Shown here in pieces: positions 26,274-30,907 of a DNA stretch of 64,000 bases. A program made the translations under genes and the position numbers. Every line of letters starts with the position of its first letter. Position 1 is the first letter of the stretch. The notes below the pieces were generated by a model, which was not told the origin of the DNA, made no database searches, and worked only from the letters and a program-made list of their open reading frames with translations. Location of the stretch: the IMG/VR virus record IMGVR_UViG_3300032288_004964, positions 1 to 64,000 of that record; one strand, 5' to 3'.

Positions 26274-27218
26274 TTATAGTTTTTTACCAGTTGATGGGTC
26301 ATAGTTCATAATTAATAACTCAACTCCCTTAGCTTGTTCACCTTTGCCTTCTGAGTTATTACCACCTTGTGCTGAACTTCTAAAAACTTCTTTTTCAGTC
26401 CAGATATATTTGTCTCTTGGTAACAATTCTTCTAATAAAGGAAAATAGTAATAAGATAGTGACCAACGACATTTTGATTTTTTAATTAAATCTAATAGCC
26501 TTCTGTGTGATGCTGGTCCAAACATACCTTCTTTATCAGCTCCATACCAAGATAATCTTTTGGCATCATCATCTCCATTTTCATCAGGTCTGTGATATGG
26601 TGGGTCTAAATATAGATAAGTATCTTCTGAGTCATATTTATTAATAAGTTCTTCAAAATCAATATTAAGAAACTCCTTAATAGTGGATAACTTATCTGTG
26701 TATTTATTTTTCTTTAATTTATCAATAAGAACTTCTAGTTTCAAACGGTCTTTATCTTTCTTATAACCATTGAAACCAGCTCCTCTTGGATAAACCGAGT
26801 TGTGAGCTGATGTAATTAAGAAAGCATAAATTGCTGCTTTTTCAAAATCACCAATTTCAAAGTCCATATTATCTAGAAAATCATTCTTGATATATTCTCT
26901 ATAAATACCCTTATAGAAATCCCATTTTTTCAAAGGGTCTGTTTCTGTTGTATTTAGTAAGGTTTTTTTAAGATTCTCTAAGTGAATAACAAACTCAGCT
27001 GGTTGAGATGCACACTTATATAAATTAACTTGGTGACGGTTTTTATCATTATAGATAACTACATCAAACTTTAGTTTTGGATCATCCATATATGTTCCCA
27101 TTGAGCCAGAAAATGGTTCTAGATAAGTTTTGATACTACCATCTTTAGGTATTTTTGAATTTATAAATTCAATAAAAATATTTGAGGATTTTCCTCCAAA
27201 ATAACTTATAACTGACAT
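26274..27218 (-). CDS. dam: DNA adenine methyltransferase (Dam/D12 class)
   Basis: YFGGK, YLEPFSGS, YND, YLDPPY, ELLIMNY motifs. Confidence 0.9.
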   Translation of the reverse strand: MSVISYFGGKSSNIFIEFINSKIPKDGSIKTYLEPFSGSMGTYMDDPKLKFDVVIYNDKNRHQVNLYKCASQPAEFVIHLENLKKTLLNTTETDPLKKWDFYKGIYREYIKNDFLDNMDFEIGDFEKAAIYAFLITSAHNSVYPRGAGFNGYKKDKDRLKLEVLIDKLKKNKYTDKLSTIKEFLNIDFEELINKYDSEDTYLYLDPPYHRPDENGDDDAKRLSWYGADKEGMFGPASHRRLLDLIKKSKCRWSLSYYYFPLLEELLPRDKYIWTEKEVFRSSAQGGNNSEGKGEQAKGVELLIMNYDPSTGKKL

Positions 27219-27225
27219 TTTAATT

Positions 27226-27741
27226 TTATTTATTTTTATATTTGATTTGGTCTTCTAATGAAGGTCTTTGATTTCTCGGTGTTAATTCATCTCTAACTTC
27301 CATTAGAATTTTACCAAGATGATTTTGTCCTTTATCGCCACATTTATCACAGGTACATATACCCCAGTAGACATCGTGCCAATAATTACCTTCAACTATG
27401 TCTTGATTAGATGTATTAATTAGCATTTCTTTTAATTCTGGATTGTTTTTAAATTTCTGTCTAACTGCCCAGTTCATTACTTCTAATTTCTTTTCATCCC
27501 AGTTACTTCTTAGTTTAACTTTACTTCCAATCTTTTTAACTTCAGCTGGATTTTTAACTAAAGCTATCATTTCTCTAAAATCTCCAGGTGTGTAGTATTT
27601 ACCATTGATTAGTTGTTGGTCATTAACTTTCATGGCTACATAAAAGTTTTCCACTGATGGATATTTAATACCTTGATGTTCTATTTCACAAGGGTAAAAA
27701 TTAGATAAGAATCTATATCTGCCTTCAAATTTATTTATCAT
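27226..27741 (-). CDS. NADAR (YbiA-like) hydrolase
   Basis: FLSNFYP...YPSVE..Y...W......M...KF...IVEGNYWHDVYWG...GQNHLGKILMEVR. Confidence 0.92.
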   Translation of the reverse strand: MINKFEGRYRFLSNFYPCEIEHQGIKYPSVENFYVAMKVNDQQLINGKYYTPGDFREMIALVKNPAEVKKIGSKVKLRSNWDEKKLEVMNWAVRQKFKNNPELKEMLINTSNQDIVEGNYWHDVYWGICTCDKCGDKGQNHLGKILMEVRDELTPRNQRPSLEDQIKYKNK

Positions 27742-27770
27742 ACTTATTATATTAAATAATGTTTAATTGT

Positions 27771-28085
27771 TTACCAATACCAAGGTCCGTCTTTATAATT
27801 ATCTTCAAATACAAAATTATCAGATATGTTAATTAGCTTATAAAGGATTACTTTAGATTTAGCTCTTTGAATTCTATTTAATTTTTTACGATAGTGTTTA
27901 GGGGCAGTACTATACCATCCATAATATTCATTATAGAATTTGTACAGAAATTTTCTGTTTATTTCTTCTTCTCTAGTTGATGTTAGATAGTTTCTACTGC
28001 TTCTACTAAAAATAGCAGCATCTTCTAGTTTAAGTGAAATATATTCTTTTTCTCTTAACCAGTGTTTGTTTGTGTGTTTTGACAT
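27771..28085 (-). CDS. Basic, aromatic-rich hypothetical protein ending in WYW; start codon sequestered in a hairpin
   Basis: 104-aa ORF; leader structure described in findings. Confidence 0.75.
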   Translation of the reverse strand: MSKHTNKHWLREKEYISLKLEDAAIFSRSSRNYLTSTREEEINRKFLYKFYNEYYGWYSTAPKHYRKKLNRIQRAKSKVILYKLINISDNFVFEDNYKDGPWYW

Positions 28086-28108
28086 ATTGTAAGTTATTTT
28101 TTAAATAC

Positions 28109-28141
28109 TTACATGTCAATTCTATCTCTTAATTTTTTCAT
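28109..28141 (-). CDS. Putative leader peptide (uORF) MKKLRDRIDM
   Basis: ATG lies 5 nt after a TATATTTG box. Its last codons and stop form the 5' arm of a hairpin that pairs with the downstream ATG. Confidence 0.55.
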   Translation of the reverse strand: MKKLRDRIDM

Positions 28142-28145
28142 ACTA

Positions 28146-28153
28146 CAAATATA
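28146..28153 (-). promoter_or_regulatory. Bacteroidota-type -7 box TATATTTG
   Basis: Matches the TAnnTTTG consensus, upstream of the uORF/WYW/NADAR/dam operon. Confidence 0.6.
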
Positions 28154-28173
28154 TATAATTTTATTTAAATTGT

Positions 28174-28202
28174 AAAAACCCACAATTTTATTGTGGGTTT
28201 TT
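28174..28202 (-). terminator. Intrinsic terminator after tmRNA
   Basis: A5-CCCACAA-tttta-TTGTGGG-T5. Confidence 0.85.
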
Positions 28203-28206
28203 CTTG

Positions 28207-28584
28207 TGGAGATGAACGGTTCTGCCACCGATGTCTTAATAGTTGTTTATATTTATTCTTTTACAGGCTTAGTTATGTTTTTCTAAACTAACAAAATAGA
28301 TACTTTTTTTGAAGGACTCTAAAAAGTTACAAAAAATGGTCTCACCTTTTTTATCCTGTGTGAATCAGGTTGGAGAATTTTTTGATAGTAACTGTTTATT
28401 AGACAGTTGCTAGATCTTCTACCAAGATCATGTTGTTTTGTAGAGCCGCTACTAAATCTTCACGAGTTCCTACTTCATTTGTTTTGCCATTTACGACGTG
28501 TTACTTAATTTATTAATCGGACACTTAACCACCCGATACCTGCATAACTACCACCACACTACCAATCAATTCTAAAACATCCCC
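28207..28584 (-). ncRNA. ssrA: tmRNA (transfer-messenger RNA)
   Basis: 5' GGGGATG pairs with 3' CATCTCC-A, giving the G3:U70 alanine identity pair. Length is ~378 nt, with an internal tag ORF after gtaaat. CCA is not encoded. Confidence 0.88.
28399..28488 (-). other. tmRNA tag reading frame (A)GKTNEVGTREDLVAALQNNMILVEDLATV**
   Basis: Resume codon GGC follows TAAAT; the frame ends TAA TAA. Confidence 0.7.
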
Positions 28585-28606: not shown

Positions 28607-28637
28607 CAAAGATATATATAATATTCCAAAAGTCAAA
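28607..28637 (-). promoter_or_regulatory. Bacteroidota primary-sigma promoter TTTG-N19-TATCTTTG for tmRNA
   Basis: Exact match to the -33/-7 consensus and spacing. Confidence 0.7.
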
Positions 28638-28653
28638 AAAGTTTAAAAATAAA

Positions 28654-29103
28654 TTAGAAAGGAGCTTCATCATCTTCTAATCCTTCTCCATAATAGAAGT
28701 TAAATACTAAAAGTGGTTTGCCATCTTTAGTTTCCCACATTTCAAATTCAGAGTCATATTGAGGAAGAATATCTCTTTTTAATCTTTTAGCAGTGTCAAA
28801 AACACTTATAATTGATTCAATCTTTTCTCTATAACCCATAGTAACTGATATTGTTATATCAAGTTCATCATGTTCAACATAAACATCTTTAATACCTTTA
28901 TTCTTGAACATAGTTCTTAGTAAATATAGAAGGTTATCCATATCTGAATCACCAATCATTTCATCTTCCTCTTCTTCTTCGGTTGCCTTCTTTGAATGAT
29001 TTGGTCTACCAAAAAGATATTCATCATCATTATAATATGATTCATCTTCATCATAATCTTGTTCGTATTCTTCGAATAGTTCTTTATAATTCTTTAGTTT
29101 CAT
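28654..29103 (-). CDS. Acidic hypothetical protein with capsid-targeting-like N-terminus
   Basis: MKLKNYKELFEE. Confidence 0.75.
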   Translation of the reverse strand: MKLKNYKELFEEYEQDYDEDESYYNDDEYLFGRPNHSKKATEEEEEDEMIGDSDMDNLLYLLRTMFKNKGIKDVYVEHDELDITISVTMGYREKIESIISVFDTAKRLKRDILPQYDSEFEMWETKDGKPLLVFNFYYGEGLEDDEAPF

Positions 29104-29104
29104 A

Positions 29105-30454
29105 TTATTTTAATTCAATTTTTAAATATGTTCCGTCAAACATAATATCTGGATCCATTTTATACTTCATTAGAAGTGATTTTAATGATGATAGTCCATC
29201 AGATATTGATTCTATATCAGAATCATCTAAATCTACTCTTATAAAGACTTTACCATTATCTCCAATCATTTTAACTTCTAATTCAAATACTGTTGATTTA
29301 ACATCAGCGATTAATCCTTTGTGTTTTTGTATAATCTCTTGATTTATACCAACTTTTCTTACTGTTGGTAGTGAATTCCAATTAACTTTTATAGAAGCCT
29401 CACATAATGAGATAAGGTAATTCATATTTTGATATTCTTGGCCTGTGTGTTCATGGAAATAGCCTACTGATATATTAGTACATTCTCTAATATCATCTAT
29501 AAATGATGCTGAATCTGTGTATATTCCTGTAGGATCTAATGATAAATCTAATCCATTTTTGTTATATTCTTTACATAAAGCTGTTCCAAATTCATCTGAA
29601 CAACATCTTCTTCCTAATTGTGAAGTAATAACTGAGTGATAGTTTCTTCTATCAAAAGAAACACATCTTTTAATATCTTTTAGATAAGATACTTTATCAT
29701 ATATTAATGATAGTTTATTTGAACCTATCCCACCTCTTTCTTCTCCTATAAAGAAGTAGTAAAGACCGGGTATATTATGTTCCATCATGTATAACATTAC
29801 TGCTACTCCTGACTTATCATCAGCTCCTAATATAGTACTTTCATCTGTTACAATATATTCTTCATCATTCTCAATCATAGAGAATAATTTAGTATTTTTT
29901 TGTTCCCTATCAGCTGTGTCTAAATGTGATGTAAACATTGTTTGTGGATTTTTACCTATTATTTTATAATAGTTTCCTACTTCATCTTTTTGCAAAGAAG
30001 GTAAGAACTGAAGGACTTCATCTTCATGTCCGTGTGGATATGTTTTAGTAACTAAAGAAAGGAATGTAGACCTAACATCTTTTGGATTATATGAGAACTC
30101 TTTAGTCTCAATAGGTGTTCCTGGTTGAACAGGTTCTCCTTTTCTTATTTTATTATATAATCTTGAGAATTCACTAGCTTCTTTATCACTTATTATACCA
30201 GGGAAATAGTATCTAACAAACTTACCTATTTTCATAGGTGTTACTTTTCCGTCTATTGTTACATCAAAAGACCAATCTTGTTTAGATACATCTACTTTTG
30301 ATATTTTTAGTCCATTATGAAATTTAGCATCTGGTTCAATCATCCAAAGTAATTCAAAAGCCAAATAATTATTTTCAGCTTCTAATTTTTTTAGAATGTT
30401 ATAAAACTCTTCAGTAAATATCATTTTAATTCTTTCCGGTGTTTGATCTGCCAT
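29105..30454 (-). CDS. Zn-dependent peptidase (M28/M20 family)
   Basis: FTSHLDT, LGADDKSG, GEERGGIGS, YTDSASF, NISVGYFHEH. Confidence 0.85.
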   Translation of the reverse strand: MADQTPERIKMIFTEEFYNILKKLEAENNYLAFELLWMIEPDAKFHNGLKISKVDVSKQDWSFDVTIDGKVTPMKIGKFVRYYFPGIISDKEASEFSRLYNKIRKGEPVQPGTPIETKEFSYNPKDVRSTFLSLVTKTYPHGHEDEVLQFLPSLQKDEVGNYYKIIGKNPQTMFTSHLDTADREQKNTKLFSMIENDEEYIVTDESTILGADDKSGVAVMLYMMEHNIPGLYYFFIGEERGGIGSNKLSLIYDKVSYLKDIKRCVSFDRRNYHSVITSQLGRRCCSDEFGTALCKEYNKNGLDLSLDPTGIYTDSASFIDDIRECTNISVGYFHEHTGQEYQNMNYLISLCEASIKVNWNSLPTVRKVGINQEIIQKHKGLIADVKSTVFELEVKMIGDNGKVFIRVDLDDSDIESISDGLSSLKSLLMKYKMDPDIMFDGTYLKIELK

Positions 30455-30490: not shown

Positions 30491-30907
30491 TTAAATTATA
30501 ATTTCATATGAATTTGTATAATCAACCTTTACTTGACCATCATTCATACCTTTTTCTTTTTTAACAAACTTTCTTTGACAATAAACAATAGTAGCTTTTT
30601 CATCTTTTGGTGATTTACTATTCTTTTTAGCGAATTCTGCCGCCTTTTTTAAAACTTCTTTACTTGGAATTAACATTTCTTTTGTTGATGTTATTTCTTT
30701 TGTTTTAATCACAACATGACTACCAGGAACTCCTTTAACATGCATCCATATATCATCATTTTCTGCTATATTAAATGTTAGATAATCATTAGACTTGGCA
30801 TCTTTACCAATATAGACTGTAAATCCATCTATTTCCTTCTTTTGTATATTTGGAAATTTATCCTTTTTAGATTCTAAATATAATTTGAAATTACTAATGT
30901 GTTTCAT
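30491..30907 (-). CDS. NFACT RNA-binding (DUF814) domain protein
   Basis: IGKDAKSNDYLT...DIWMHVKGVPGSHVVI...AAEFAKKNSK...V.K..G...GQV. Confidence 0.9.
   Translation of the reverse strand: MKHISNFKLYLESKKDKFPNIQKKEIDGFTVYIGKDAKSNDYLTFNIAENDDIWMHVKGVPGSHVVIKTKEITSTKEMLIPSKEVLKKAAEFAKKNSKSPKDEKATIVYCQRKFVKKEKGMNDGQVKVDYTNSYEIII

What the first reader, a model, noticed from the sequence alone, without database searches (positions are those of the whole stretch)
28207..28584. Phage tmRNA with a 29-aa tag ending LATV and a non-canonical T-loop
The acceptor stem with G3:U70 is canonical. The T-arm reads CGGT-GGCAGA-ACCG instead of GGTTCGA. The predicted tag is about three times the usual ~10 aa and lacks the terminal ALAA degron, although it has an internal LVAAL. 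It resumes with Gly like Bacteroidota tags. Inference: it may rescue ribosomes while redirecting or sparing tagged proteins, or escape host anti-tRNA/tmRNA nucleases.
Basis: partly seen in the sequence, partly recalled or inferred. Interest (0 to 1): 0.7.

Follow-up and report, generated by a model that had tools for sequence, protein, structure and literature searches.

The report
Hidden tmRNA family in huge phages
A 385-kb freshwater phage carries its own ribosome-rescue RNA (tmRNA) and partner protein SmpB; this RNA belongs to a large phage family that standard finders miss because its tRNA-like elbow is rebuilt and its tag-coding part is three times the usual length.

Summary
Window 28207-28584 (minus strand) is a one-piece tmRNA. 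It scores 33.7 bits on Rfam RF00023 over the full model, below the 47-bit cut-off, and ARAGORN finds nothing. The acceptor stem has G3:U70 and discriminator A; CCA is not encoded. The tag reading frame has 29 codons, resumes at GGC and ends LATV, TAA TAA.

I found 66 further distinct relatives in IMG/VR and two in the 634-642 kb "Mahaphage" genomes. The acceptor stem, T stem, helix 2 and PK1 all covary. ARAGORN detects 2 of the 66. Of 12 loci tested, Rfam passes the same two, the members with a canonical T-loop. ARAGORN reads their tags in the same frame and from the same start.

The odd T-loop (core GGCAG) is a co-evolved alternative: D-loop GG goes with NUC, D-loop AG with NGC. The long tag runs through two extra covarying hairpins.

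The phage also encodes an intact SmpB and a CCA-adding-enzyme homologue. Freshwater metatranscriptomes cover only the tmRNA, not its flanks.

The idea that tagged proteins are spared is not supported: tags end in V or A, like working ssrA variants. This is a new variant of a known kind; function is inferred, not shown.

The parts
28207..28584 (-). tmRNA gene, from mature 5' G1 (28584) to discriminator A (28207); 378 nt, CCA not encoded
   Evidence: Rfam RF00023 33.7 bits, E 1.4e-11, full model. 67-member family alignment with covariation. RNA-library contigs cover 28206-28576 only.
28634..28637 (-). -33-like TTTG of a Bacteroidota-type promoter, 19 nt upstream of the -7 motif
   Evidence: Sequence. 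TTTG lies 17-21 nt (spacers seen: 19 or 20) upstream of the -7 motif in 37 of 66 family upstream regions. The promoter consensus is from established knowledge and is not tested here.
28607..28614 (-). -7-like motif TATCTTTG (TAnnTTTG), 22 nt upstream of G1; implies a short leader removed by RNase P
   Evidence: TAnnTTTG is present 10-29 nt upstream of G1 in 48 of 66 family members, and in one more at 52 nt. The extended motif occurs once in the window against 0.03 expected.
28578..28584 (-). Acceptor stem 5' strand GGGGAUG (G3 at 28582)
   Evidence: Seven pairs are 100% canonical in 67 sequences. G3:U is invariant. Pairs 5 and 6 show compensatory changes.
28566..28577 (-). D-loop analogue UUUUAGAAUUGA; has A12-G13 (28573-28572) where bacterial tmRNAs have GG
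   Evidence: Comparison with four bacterial tmRNAs. D-loop AG goes with T-loop NGC in 48 of 49 members and GG with NUC in 10 of 10.
28538..28565 (-). Helix 2, 5' strand
   Evidence: RNAalifold on 67 sequences; most pairs show compensatory changes.
28516..28537 (-). Pseudoknot 1 region (stem AUCGG/CCGAU)
   Evidence: Rfam alignment. The stem is 99-100% canonical, with two compensatory pairs.
28489..28494 (-). Upstream frame-setting element GUAAAU; U at -5 and A at -4 relative to the resume codon
   Evidence: NUAAAY/NYAAAY precedes the resume codon across the family. The Rfam consensus has the same U/A placement. The role of U85/A86 in E. coli is established knowledge (cf. PMC2481249).
28402..28488 (-). 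Tag reading frame, 29 codons: GKTNEVGTREDLVAALQNNMILVEDLATV
   Evidence: Same start and frame as the ARAGORN-called tags of L185 and L192. The frame stays open for 27-30 codons in 65 of 67 members and 23 in L143; L140 shows a short frame but a 27-codon tag. The indels seen by eye in the alignment are +3, -3 and three of -6; the automatic gap-run count also lists 1-, 4-, 7-, 10- and 13-column runs, which I attribute to the ragged alignment at the ORF's end.
28396..28401 (-). Tandem stop codons UAA UAA in the loop of the last MLD hairpin
   Evidence: Sequence. The stop is TAA or TAG at the homologous place in all members.
28440..28473 (-). Hairpin 1 inside the tag frame; its 12-nt loop GAAGAUUUAGUA encodes EDLV
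   Evidence: Covarying stem. Codon 9 (R/S/N/K) pairs with codon 14 (A/F). Fold.
28413..28429 (-). Hairpin 2 inside the tag frame (GAUCUU/AAGAUC)
   Evidence: The stem sequence differs between subfamilies but pairs in each subfamily examined by eye. Four of five divergent members fold as three hairpins, though the stem predicted at this place in L185 is only 3 bp.
28390..28408 (-). Hairpin 3 (helix 5 equivalent) holding the last two codons and the stops
   Evidence: Rfam alignment; fold.
28269..28389 (-). Pseudoknot 2-4 region, only partly alignable to the Rfam model
   Evidence: Rfam alignment has deletions here. One covarying helix at tmRNA positions 222-225:240-243. Not resolved further.
28236..28268 (-). 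Helix 2, 3' strand
28215..28232 (-). T arm: 5-bp stem AUCGG/CCGUU with a U.U mismatch, and an 8-nt loop UGGCAGAA (28227-28220) with core GGCAG
   Evidence: All five stem pairs show compensatory changes in the family, 96-100% canonical. Loop catalogue. L022 has the identical arm; L178 has U-A where the window has U.U.
28208..28214 (-). Acceptor stem 3' strand CAUCUCC (U70 at 28210), followed by discriminator A at 28207
28174..28197 (-). Intrinsic terminator: stem CCCACAAU/AUUGUGGG followed by a U run, 10 nt after the discriminator
   Evidence: Read from the sequence.

Best explanation
This is a working phage tmRNA. It is one half of a phage-encoded trans-translation pair that has been inherited vertically in a clade of huge, probably Bacteroidota-infecting, freshwater phages.

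Inferred mechanism, step by step:
1. The gene is transcribed from its own Bacteroidota-type promoter.
2. RNase P cuts the 5' leader.
3. CCA is added, possibly by the phage's own CCA-adding-enzyme homologue.
4. Host AlaRS charges it with alanine through the G3:U70 pair and the A73 discriminator.
5. Phage SmpB binds the tRNA-like domain.
6. The complex enters ribosomes stalled on broken mRNAs in the infected cell.
7. Translation resumes at GGC and adds Ala plus 29 residues, ending in a small non-polar C-terminus that most likely marks the product for host proteases.

The tRNA-like elbow has been rebuilt rather than lost. C56 and R57 are kept, while the G18:psi55 contact is replaced by A18:G55 in an enlarged loop. 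The tag is long because the mRNA-like domain gained two weak hairpins that must stay translatable.

Shown here: identity, family, covariation, frame conservation, presence in RNA libraries, and the partner genes.

Inferred: charging, SmpB pairing, ribosome rescue, and the fate of tagged proteins.
For: - Full-length Rfam tmRNA match.
- 67 distinct family members. Acceptor pairs are 100% canonical and G3:U is invariant. All five T-stem pairs, helix 2 and PK1 show compensatory changes.
- ARAGORN calls two members and gives homologous 27-residue tags in the same frame.
- The resume context UAAAU|GGC AAx ACA equals that of a Bacteroidota tmRNA.
- The indels seen by eye in the reading frame are multiples of three, against mostly 1-2 nt outside it (the automatic gap-run count is less clean near the ORF's end); the last codon is GUN or GCN in 66 of 67.
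- D-loop and T-loop covary: GG with NUC in 10 of 10, AG with NGC in 48 of 49. L186 and L189 are almost identical over the first 200 alignment columns, yet differ A12/G12 together with GGCAG/GUCAG.
- The phage's SmpB is intact, 144 aa including the C-terminal tail, 174.7 bits.
- SmpB is present in 4 of 5 large relatives. The phage SmpBs form one clade against 80 bacterial ones, SH-aLRT 100.
- A CCA-adding-enzyme family gene lies in the genome.
- Synteny is conserved: prohead protease, capsid, NFACT-R, peptidase, o149, tmRNA, NADAR, Dam, each found in 39-87 loci; o104, which lies between tmRNA and NADAR in the window, in 23.
- Four freshwater and lake metatranscriptomes hold contigs only over 28206-28576 (depth 5-237), with almost nothing on the flanks: zero apart from a faint patch, depth under 3, at 28975-29076. 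Eight contigs in X18 are at least 99% identical. 21 RNA-labelled runs from 19 study codes hold family words.
Against: - There is no direct evidence of alanylation, CCA addition, SmpB binding or tagging. The RNA data are assembled contigs without ends.
- The T-loop lacks U54, U55 and A58, which are near-universal in tmRNA and tRNA.
- The window's own lineage also has a U.U mismatch and a loop one base shorter, so it could be a weakened copy.
- pN/pS in the tag frame (0.71) is no lower than in the other frames (0.68-0.90). The peptide sequence itself therefore shows no clear coding selection beyond frame maintenance and the last residue.
- MLD hairpins do not fold better than shuffled sequences.
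- No AlaRS, EF-Tu, ClpP or RF-1-domain gene is in the phage, so every downstream step depends on an unknown host.
- The complex prediction was not run by the tool.
Confidence: 0.72

Rival explanations
1. Decoy or inhibitor. The RNA mimics tmRNA to soak up host SmpB, AlaRS or EF-Tu and shut down host trans-translation, as proposed for the TLD-only molecule of mycobacteriophage DS6A.
For: - A non-canonical elbow could make it a poor substrate on the ribosome.
- DS6A-type molecules are discussed in PMC4131195.
- Most of the tag shows no clear peptide-level selection.
Against: - A decoy needs neither an open 27-30-codon frame kept in 65 of 67 members with in-frame indels, nor a conserved frame-setting element, nor stops in the helix 5 loop.
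- The phage brings its own full-length SmpB with the C-terminal tail instead of only titrating the host's.
Confidence: 0.1
2. The tag is not a degradation signal. It has another use: it spares, relocates or marks tagged proteins, or it is read by a dedicated phage factor.
For: - The tag is three times the normal length.
- It has an invariant EV...EDLV core.
- It lacks ALAA.
- The phage has no ClpP of its own.
Against: - The invariant core is invariant at synonymous sites too (GAA never GAG, GUA never GUN). It sits in a hairpin loop whose stem covaries at the cost of R/N and A/F swaps. This points to RNA-level rather than peptide-level constraint.
- The C-terminal half differs freely between subfamilies.
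- The one clear peptide-level constraint is a terminal V or A, as in working ssrA variants.
- The neighbour o149 shows no adaptor-like fold.
Confidence: 0.13
3. Decaying relic. It is a captured host tmRNA that is losing function in this lineage.
For: - Sub-threshold Rfam score.
- ARAGORN finds nothing.
- U.U mismatch and shortened T-loop in the window.
Against: - Compensatory changes run throughout the family.
- Position in the structural gene block is conserved across dozens of contigs.
- The co-inherited SmpB is monophyletic.
- Coverage in RNA libraries is high and discrete.
- The identical T arm occurs in the independent contig L022, and a repaired pair occurs in L178.
Confidence: 0.05

Closest known systems
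Bacterial one-piece tmRNA (Rfam RF00023), Bacteroidota/Ignavibacteriota type
   Same: - Acceptor stem with G3:U70 and discriminator A.
- Helix 2 and PK1.
- Frame-setting UA at -5/-4, and Gly resume codon at gene position ~97.
- Stops in the helix 5 loop.
- The GAC motif 5' of the T arm.
- The SmpB partner.
   Different: - T-loop core is GGCAG in an 8-9-nt loop, not UUCGAAU in 7 nt.
- The D-loop has AG, not GG.
- The tag is 27-30 residues (23 in one member), not 9-10.
- Two extra hairpins lie in the reading frame.
- Endings are ATV, EVA or ELV, not LAA.
- It scores below the Rfam cut-off and is invisible to ARAGORN.
Previously listed phage tmRNAs (mycobacteriophage Bxz1 group, Bacillus phage G, DS6A TLD-only; PMC4131195) and tmRNA/SmpB reported in huge phages (PMC7162821)
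   Same: - Phage-borne ssrA.
- Huge phages were reported to carry both tmRNA and SmpB.
- The two nearest GenBank relatives (LR745206, LR756502) are genomes from that study, and their SmpB genes are annotated in its supplementary files.
   Different: - Those tmRNAs were found with ARAGORN, which misses this family in LR745206 and LR756502 and in 64 of 66 IMG/VR members.
- I found no description of the long tag, the rebuilt elbow or the family.
Long-tag tmRNAs of Mycoplasma and Chlamydia (from my own knowledge, not checked here)
   Same: Tags of more than 20 residues ending in small non-polar residues. In Mycoplasma the long tag is read by Lon rather than ClpXP.
   Different: No sequence relation. 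In the phage family the length comes with covarying hairpins inside the frame.

Membership tests
tmRNA (ssrA, RF00023) | 7-bp acceptor stem with G3:U70 and an unpaired discriminator (alanine identity) | tested here: met
   Seven of seven pairs, with G3:U invariant in 67 sequences.
tmRNA (ssrA, RF00023) | T arm stacked on the acceptor stem with a canonical T-loop (UUCRANY) | tested here: inconclusive
   The 5-bp stem is present and covaries. The loop is UGGCAGAA, not canonical. C56 and R57 equivalents are kept, and the 18:55 contact is apparently replaced. Two family members keep the canonical loop.
tmRNA (ssrA, RF00023) | Score at or above the Rfam gathering cut-off | tested here: not met
   33.7 bits against 47. 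Only the canonical-loop relatives pass, at 57.3 and 50.4 bits. This is a curated detection threshold, not a biological feature.
tmRNA (ssrA, RF00023) | Long helix 2 closing the molecule, and PK1 upstream of the reading frame | tested here: met
   Rfam alignment; covariation.
tmRNA (ssrA, RF00023) | Internal reading frame without a start codon, with a resume codon set by an upstream UA element and stops in helix 5 | tested here: met
tmRNA (ssrA, RF00023) | Tag ending in a protease degron (typically ALAA) | tested here: inconclusive
   The tag ends LATV. The family ends in V or A. Similar engineered endings are degraded in Salmonella (AAV and ASV only when ClpXP is present). Activity in the real host is unknown.
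tmRNA (ssrA, RF00023) | Pseudoknots PK2-PK4 | tested here: inconclusive
   The region aligns only in part, and one covarying helix was found. These pseudoknots are dispensable or replaced in some bacteria (established knowledge).
tmRNA (ssrA, RF00023) | Alanylation, SmpB binding, and tagging on stalled ribosomes | not testable with these tools
SmpB (PF01668), the partner, outside the window at G000:C1:238689-239123 | Full SmpB domain plus the basic C-terminal tail | tested here: met
   174.7 bits over model positions 1-140 of 143. The tail reads GKKMYDKRETIKKRDVERDLRRVA. PDB SmpB hits reach E 3e-36 and align through the tail.

The most novel reading that the evidence does not exclude
A clade of huge phages runs a semi-orthogonal trans-translation system. 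Its tmRNA elbow no longer carries the U54/U55 targets of the host T-loop modification enzymes. The G18:psi55 contact is replaced by A18:G55, and the RNA is matched to a co-evolving phage SmpB. The RNA would thereby escape host or rival factors that read the canonical T-loop. Its expanded, structured reading frame would control when or how tagging is completed. If so, the universally conserved tRNA elbow is more replaceable than thought, and phages take over ribosome rescue rather than merely supplementing it.
Probability: 0.2. Interest if true: 0.85.

Novelty: new variant of a known kind. Interest (0 to 1): 0.62.

Why it matters
- Scale of what is missed. ARAGORN detects 2 of 66 IMG/VR members, and Rfam's cut-off passes the same two of the 12 loci tested. 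Phage tmRNA counts from huge-phage surveys are therefore probably underestimates. A family-specific covariance model would fix this.
- A natural experiment on the tRNA elbow. The family runs from UUCGAAU through AUCGAA, UUCGUUA and AGCGAUA to GGCAG, with a matching D-loop change. It shows which T-loop features trans-translation really needs.
- A complete kit. tmRNA, SmpB and a CCA-adding-enzyme homologue sit in one phage, and the tmRNA lies in the conserved structural gene block. The RNA is abundant in lake metatranscriptomes. Together these argue that ribosome rescue matters during infection by these phages.
- A caution on reading tags. A tag whose conservation is largely RNA-structural warns against reading peptide function from tag sequence alone.

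Tried and rejected
- ARAGORN and Rfam gathering on the window found nothing; the E-value mode was needed.
- The genome-wide RF00023 search returned only tRNAs, because its first-look filter missed the tmRNA.
- The pN/pS and codon-position test gave no clear coding signal. I rely on frame maintenance, in-frame indels and the last codon instead.
- A shorter, canonical tag from another frame (GCA AAA CAA AUG AAG UAG) was rejected because relatives do not conserve it. Resumption at GUA two codons upstream was rejected because its upstream context is not conserved and both ARAGORN and Rfam place the start at the G codon.
- Stop-codon recoding as a reason for needing rescue: coding density is the same under code 11, TAG read-through and TGA read-through (0.82-0.84), so there is no recoding.
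- Phage-encoded AlaRS, EF-Tu, ClpP and RF-1-domain proteins: none found.
- Neighbour o149 as a possible tag adaptor: no family, and the fold search was uninformative.
- Neighbour o449 is an M20/M28/M42-like metallopeptidase, not an ATP-dependent protease.
- SmpB-TLD complex prediction was not folded by the tool and gives no evidence either way.
- The Al-Shayeb supplementary GenBank files hold no tmRNA features at all. They cannot show whether this tmRNA was seen.
- MLD hairpins in single sequences do not fold better than shuffles. Support for them is comparative only.

Full report
**What the window is.** The window is the first 64 kb of a 385,333-bp IMG/VR virus record that CheckV rates 95% complete. 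DNA runs holding it come from freshwater, groundwater, lake and plankton metagenomes. The genome uses the standard code: coding density is 0.82 under code 11 and 0.84 with TAG or TGA read through. It carries 37 tRNA genes.

**Checking the observation.** ARAGORN and Rfam at the gathering threshold find no RNA gene in the window. Rfam in E-value mode gives one strong match. It is RF00023 tmRNA on the minus strand at 28204-28584, with 33.7 bits against a 47-bit cut-off, E 1.4e-11, covering the whole model.

- GGGGAUG pairs with CAUCUCC, giving G3:U70.
- The discriminator is A at 28207, followed by CAA rather than CCA.
- The T arm is AUCGG-UGGCAGAA-CCGUU.
- The frame runs GGC ... GUC UAA UAA and encodes GKTNEVGTREDLVAALQNNMILVEDLATV.
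- An intrinsic terminator hairpin (28174-28197) follows.

**Is it real? The family.** BLAST found homologues at 81% and 75% identity in LR745206 (634,780 bp) and LR756502 (642,428 bp), both unannotated. These are genomes of the "Mahaphage" clade, predicted to infect Bacteroidetes (PMC7162821).

Three pattern scans of IMG/VR followed by nhmmer gave 115 hits. Of these, 86 were full length and 66 were distinct sequences. A MAFFT and RNAalifold analysis of all 67 sequences shows:
- The acceptor stem is 100% paired, with invariant G3:U and compensatory changes at pairs 5 and 6.
- All five T-stem pairs show compensatory changes and are 96-100% canonical.
- The long helix 2 and the PK1 stem covary.

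This is a constrained RNA, not a chance look-alike.

**Why the finders miss it.** ARAGORN detects 2 of the 66 distinct relatives. Of 12 representative loci, Rfam's cut-off passes only the same two. Those two, L185 and L192, are the only members with a canonical UUCGART T-loop. ARAGORN also finds nothing in the LR745206 and LR756502 loci. ARAGORN is the tool the huge-phage survey used for tmRNAs. Its supplementary GenBank files annotate the SmpB genes of both genomes but contain no tmRNA features at all. Whether this RNA was noticed there cannot be told.

**The tag frame.** Several lines fix the resume codon at GGC (28488-28486):
1. ARAGORN's own call in L185 and L192 gives ATSNEVGTAEDLVSALRNN..., which starts at the homologous codon.
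2. A Bacteroidota tmRNA, found through its SmpB, has UAUAAAU|GGC AAU ACA with tag GNTQFAMAA. The window has CGUAAAU|GGC AAA ACA at the same gene position, about 97.
3. U at -5 and A at -4 match the Rfam consensus.
4. Upstream of GUAAAY, relatives differ by 1-2-nt indels that break the frame.

In 65 of 67 members the frame stays open for 27-30 codons; it is 23 in L143, and L140 reads as a short frame but as 27 codons. It ends in TAA or TAG at the homologous spot. The indels I can see by eye inside the frame are +3, -3 and three separate -6 events, while 1- and 2-nt indels dominate outside it. The automatic count of gap runs inside the ORF columns is less clean. It also lists runs of 1, 4, 7, 10 and 13 columns, which I attribute to ragged alignment at the end of the frame. 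So the frame is very probably translated, and the "different resume codon gives a short tag" escape is closed.

**What the long tag is made of.** The pN/pS ratio in frame (0.71) is no better than out of frame (0.68-0.90). The alignment shows why. The frame runs through two extra hairpins before the usual helix 5.
- In hairpin 1, codon 9 (CGU, AGU, AAU or AAA) pairs with codon 14 (GCG, GCU or UUU). The R/S/N/K and A/F alternations in the peptide are therefore base-pair covariation.
- The 12-nt loop GAAGAUUUAGUA (EDLV) is almost invariant, even at synonymous sites.
- Hairpin 2 has unrelated sequences in different subfamilies (GAUCUU/AAGAUC, UGGAG/CUCCA, GCUCA/UGAGC, GGCUC/GAGCUC) but pairs in each that I examined.

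These hairpins are weak, with fold energies no better than shuffles. That fits a region ribosomes must read through. The clearest peptide-level signal is the last residue. The final codon is GUN or GCN with any third base, giving V or A in 66 of 67 tags.

**The T-loop.** Across the family the loop forms a series:
- UUCGAAU
- UUCGAA, AUCGAA and AUCGGA
- UUCGUUA, AGCGAUA, AGCGAAA and AGUCGGAG
- GGCAGUR (36 of 67 with exactly that 7-nt loop; 44 of 67 have GGC at the 54-56 positions), GUCAGUG and AGCAGUA

The equivalents of C56 and purine 57 are kept almost throughout; positions 54, 55 and 58 change. The loop is usually 9 nt between five covarying pairs, with a possible sixth G-C pair. The window, L022, L178 and L213 form a sub-lineage with an 8-nt loop NGGCAGAR. 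The window and L022 also have a U.U mismatch where L178 has U-A.

The D-loop changes in step. Members with GG have U before the invariant C (10 of 10). Members with AG have G there (48 of 49).

L186 and L189 are almost identical over the first 200 alignment columns, which include the whole tag frame. Yet they differ A12/G12 together with GGCAG/GUCAG. I read this as the tertiary contact G18:psi55 being replaced by A18:G55 while G19:C56 is kept. That is an inference from covariation, resting on at least two independent switches. None of the phage's 37 tRNAs has this loop: 29 have TTCRA and 8 have ATCGTWA.

**Partners and context.**
- The phage encodes an intact 144-residue SmpB with the basic C-terminal tail. 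It is about 50% identical to SmpBs of Ignavibacteriota, Bacteroidota and Chloroflexota.
- SmpB is present in 4 of 5 large relatives' records. The five phage SmpBs form one clade against the 80 nearest bacterial ones, SH-aLRT 100.
- A CCA-adding-enzyme family gene is present. This suits tmRNA and tRNA genes without encoded CCA.
- No AlaRS, EF-Tu, ClpP or RF-1-domain gene was found. No tRNA-Ala is among the 37 tRNAs. Charging and delivery must therefore use host factors.
- The tmRNA sits in a conserved block: prohead protease, gp23-like capsid protein, NFACT-R protein, M20/M28-like peptidase, o149, tmRNA, o104, NADAR, Dam methylase. Each neighbour except o104 (23 loci) recurs in 33-87 of the family loci.
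- Upstream, 49 of 66 members have TAnnTTTG. In 37 a TTTG lies 19-20 nt further up. This is the Bacteroidota promoter pattern, known from the literature and not tested here.

These features, the Gly resume codon and the SmpB affinities all point to a Bacteroidota host. The host itself is unknown.

**Expression.** Assembled contigs from four freshwater and lake metatranscriptomes lie only on 28206-28576, at summed depth 5-237. The flanking 27700-28200 is at zero depth. So is 28620-29200, apart from a faint patch (depth under 3) at 28975-29076. DNA carry-over therefore cannot explain the signal. One run holds eight contigs at least 99% identical to the window, and the others hold relatives. In all, 21 RNA-labelled runs from 19 study codes (lake, river, estuary, marine) hold family words. 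These are contigs, so exact ends and CCA addition cannot be read.

**Mechanism and rivals.** The best reading (about 0.72) is a working phage tmRNA-SmpB pair. It keeps ribosomes available in infected cells and adds Ala plus 29 residues ending in a small non-polar C-terminus.

Engineered ssrA endings LVA, AAV and ASV are all degraded in Salmonella, and AAV and ASV degradation was lost without ClpXP (PMC11003136). The family's ATV, AVA, EVA and ELV endings look like these. Activity in the true host remains untested.

Three rivals remain:
- A decoy role (about 0.10) does not explain frame maintenance or the phage's own SmpB.
- A non-degron tag function (about 0.13) is weakened because most tag conservation is RNA-level.
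- A decaying relic (about 0.05) is contradicted by covariation, synteny and expression.

**Novelty.** Phage tmRNAs and phage SmpB are known (PMC4131195; PMC7162821). I found no description of this family, its rebuilt elbow or its structured long reading frame in the searchable literature. It is a new variant of a known kind. It is of real interest to tmRNA and tRNA-structure specialists and to phage annotators, but its function rests on inference.

Noticed in passing
window 30491-30907 (-): A stand-alone 138-aa protein with an NFACT-R_1 (DUF814) RNA-binding domain (E 4.8e-16). This is the domain found in the RqcH/NEMF ribosome quality-control factors. It lies between the capsid gene and the peptidase, three genes from the tmRNA, and is conserved in 60 family loci. 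It may be a second ribosome-rescue-related function in the same block.
   Followed up: partly
window 29105-30454 (-): A 449-aa protein matching PHROG 4191 'peptidase' (E 2.6e-66). It has weak sequence hits to tripeptidase and peptidase T, and Atlas neighbours carry M20/M28/M42 domains. It is conserved in 87 family loci next to o149 and the tmRNA. It is a metallopeptidase, not an ATP-dependent protease.
   Followed up: partly
window 28654-29103 (-): A 149-aa protein directly upstream of the tmRNA promoter, conserved in 82 loci. It has an acidic disordered N-terminal half and a small alpha/beta C-terminal domain. It has no family, and the fold search gave no informative match.
   Followed up: yes
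G000:C1:370132-370204 (outside the window): A tRNA with anticodon CUA (amber suppressor; ARAGORN labels it 'Pyl') in a genome whose coding density shows no TAG recoding. Read-through of host TAG stops would create extra non-stop ribosomes, which is a possible link to the rescue system.
   Followed up: partly
G000:C1:236363-282921 (outside the window): Eight of the 37 phage tRNAs (Phe, His, two Ile, Asn, two Val, Thr) have T-loops of the form AUCGUWA or AUCGAUA instead of UUCRA, so position 54 is A rather than U. There is no tRNA-Ala among the 37.
   Followed up: no
G000:C1:383124-383492 (outside the window): A 402-aa open frame with the PolyA_pol / CCA-adding nucleotidyltransferase domain (108.5 bits). 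Most phage tRNA genes and the tmRNA gene lack encoded CCA.
   Followed up: partly
window 28450-28461 (-), tmRNA positions 124-135: The 12-nt loop GAAGAUUUAGUA inside the tag frame is almost invariant in 67 sequences, including synonymous positions. Only its two central bases vary. No pairing partner or binding factor was identified.
   Followed up: partly
window 28607-28650 (-) and the homologous regions of family loci: A conserved upstream block AAACTTTTTTGA - about 19 nt - TAnnTTTG. It persists as AAACTTTTT...TATAATATATA in members that lack the TTTG end. It may be a phage-specific promoter variant.
   Followed up: partly
window 26274-27741 (-): A NADAR-domain protein (E 4.9e-29) and a Dam-type N6-adenine methyltransferase lie directly downstream of the tmRNA. 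They are conserved in 79 and 65 family loci.
   Followed up: no
L048 607-933 (+), that is G000:C1:237801-238127: A thioredoxin-like protein (WCGPC motif) lies two genes upstream of the phage SmpB.
   Followed up: no
metatranscriptome X16, loose end at window 28232: A relative's RNA contig ends ...CGGAAUGCGAUGUCCGUCAUCUCCA. This is a further T-loop variant (AUGCGAU-like) not seen among the IMG/VR members, so the family's loop diversity is larger than catalogued here.
   Followed up: no
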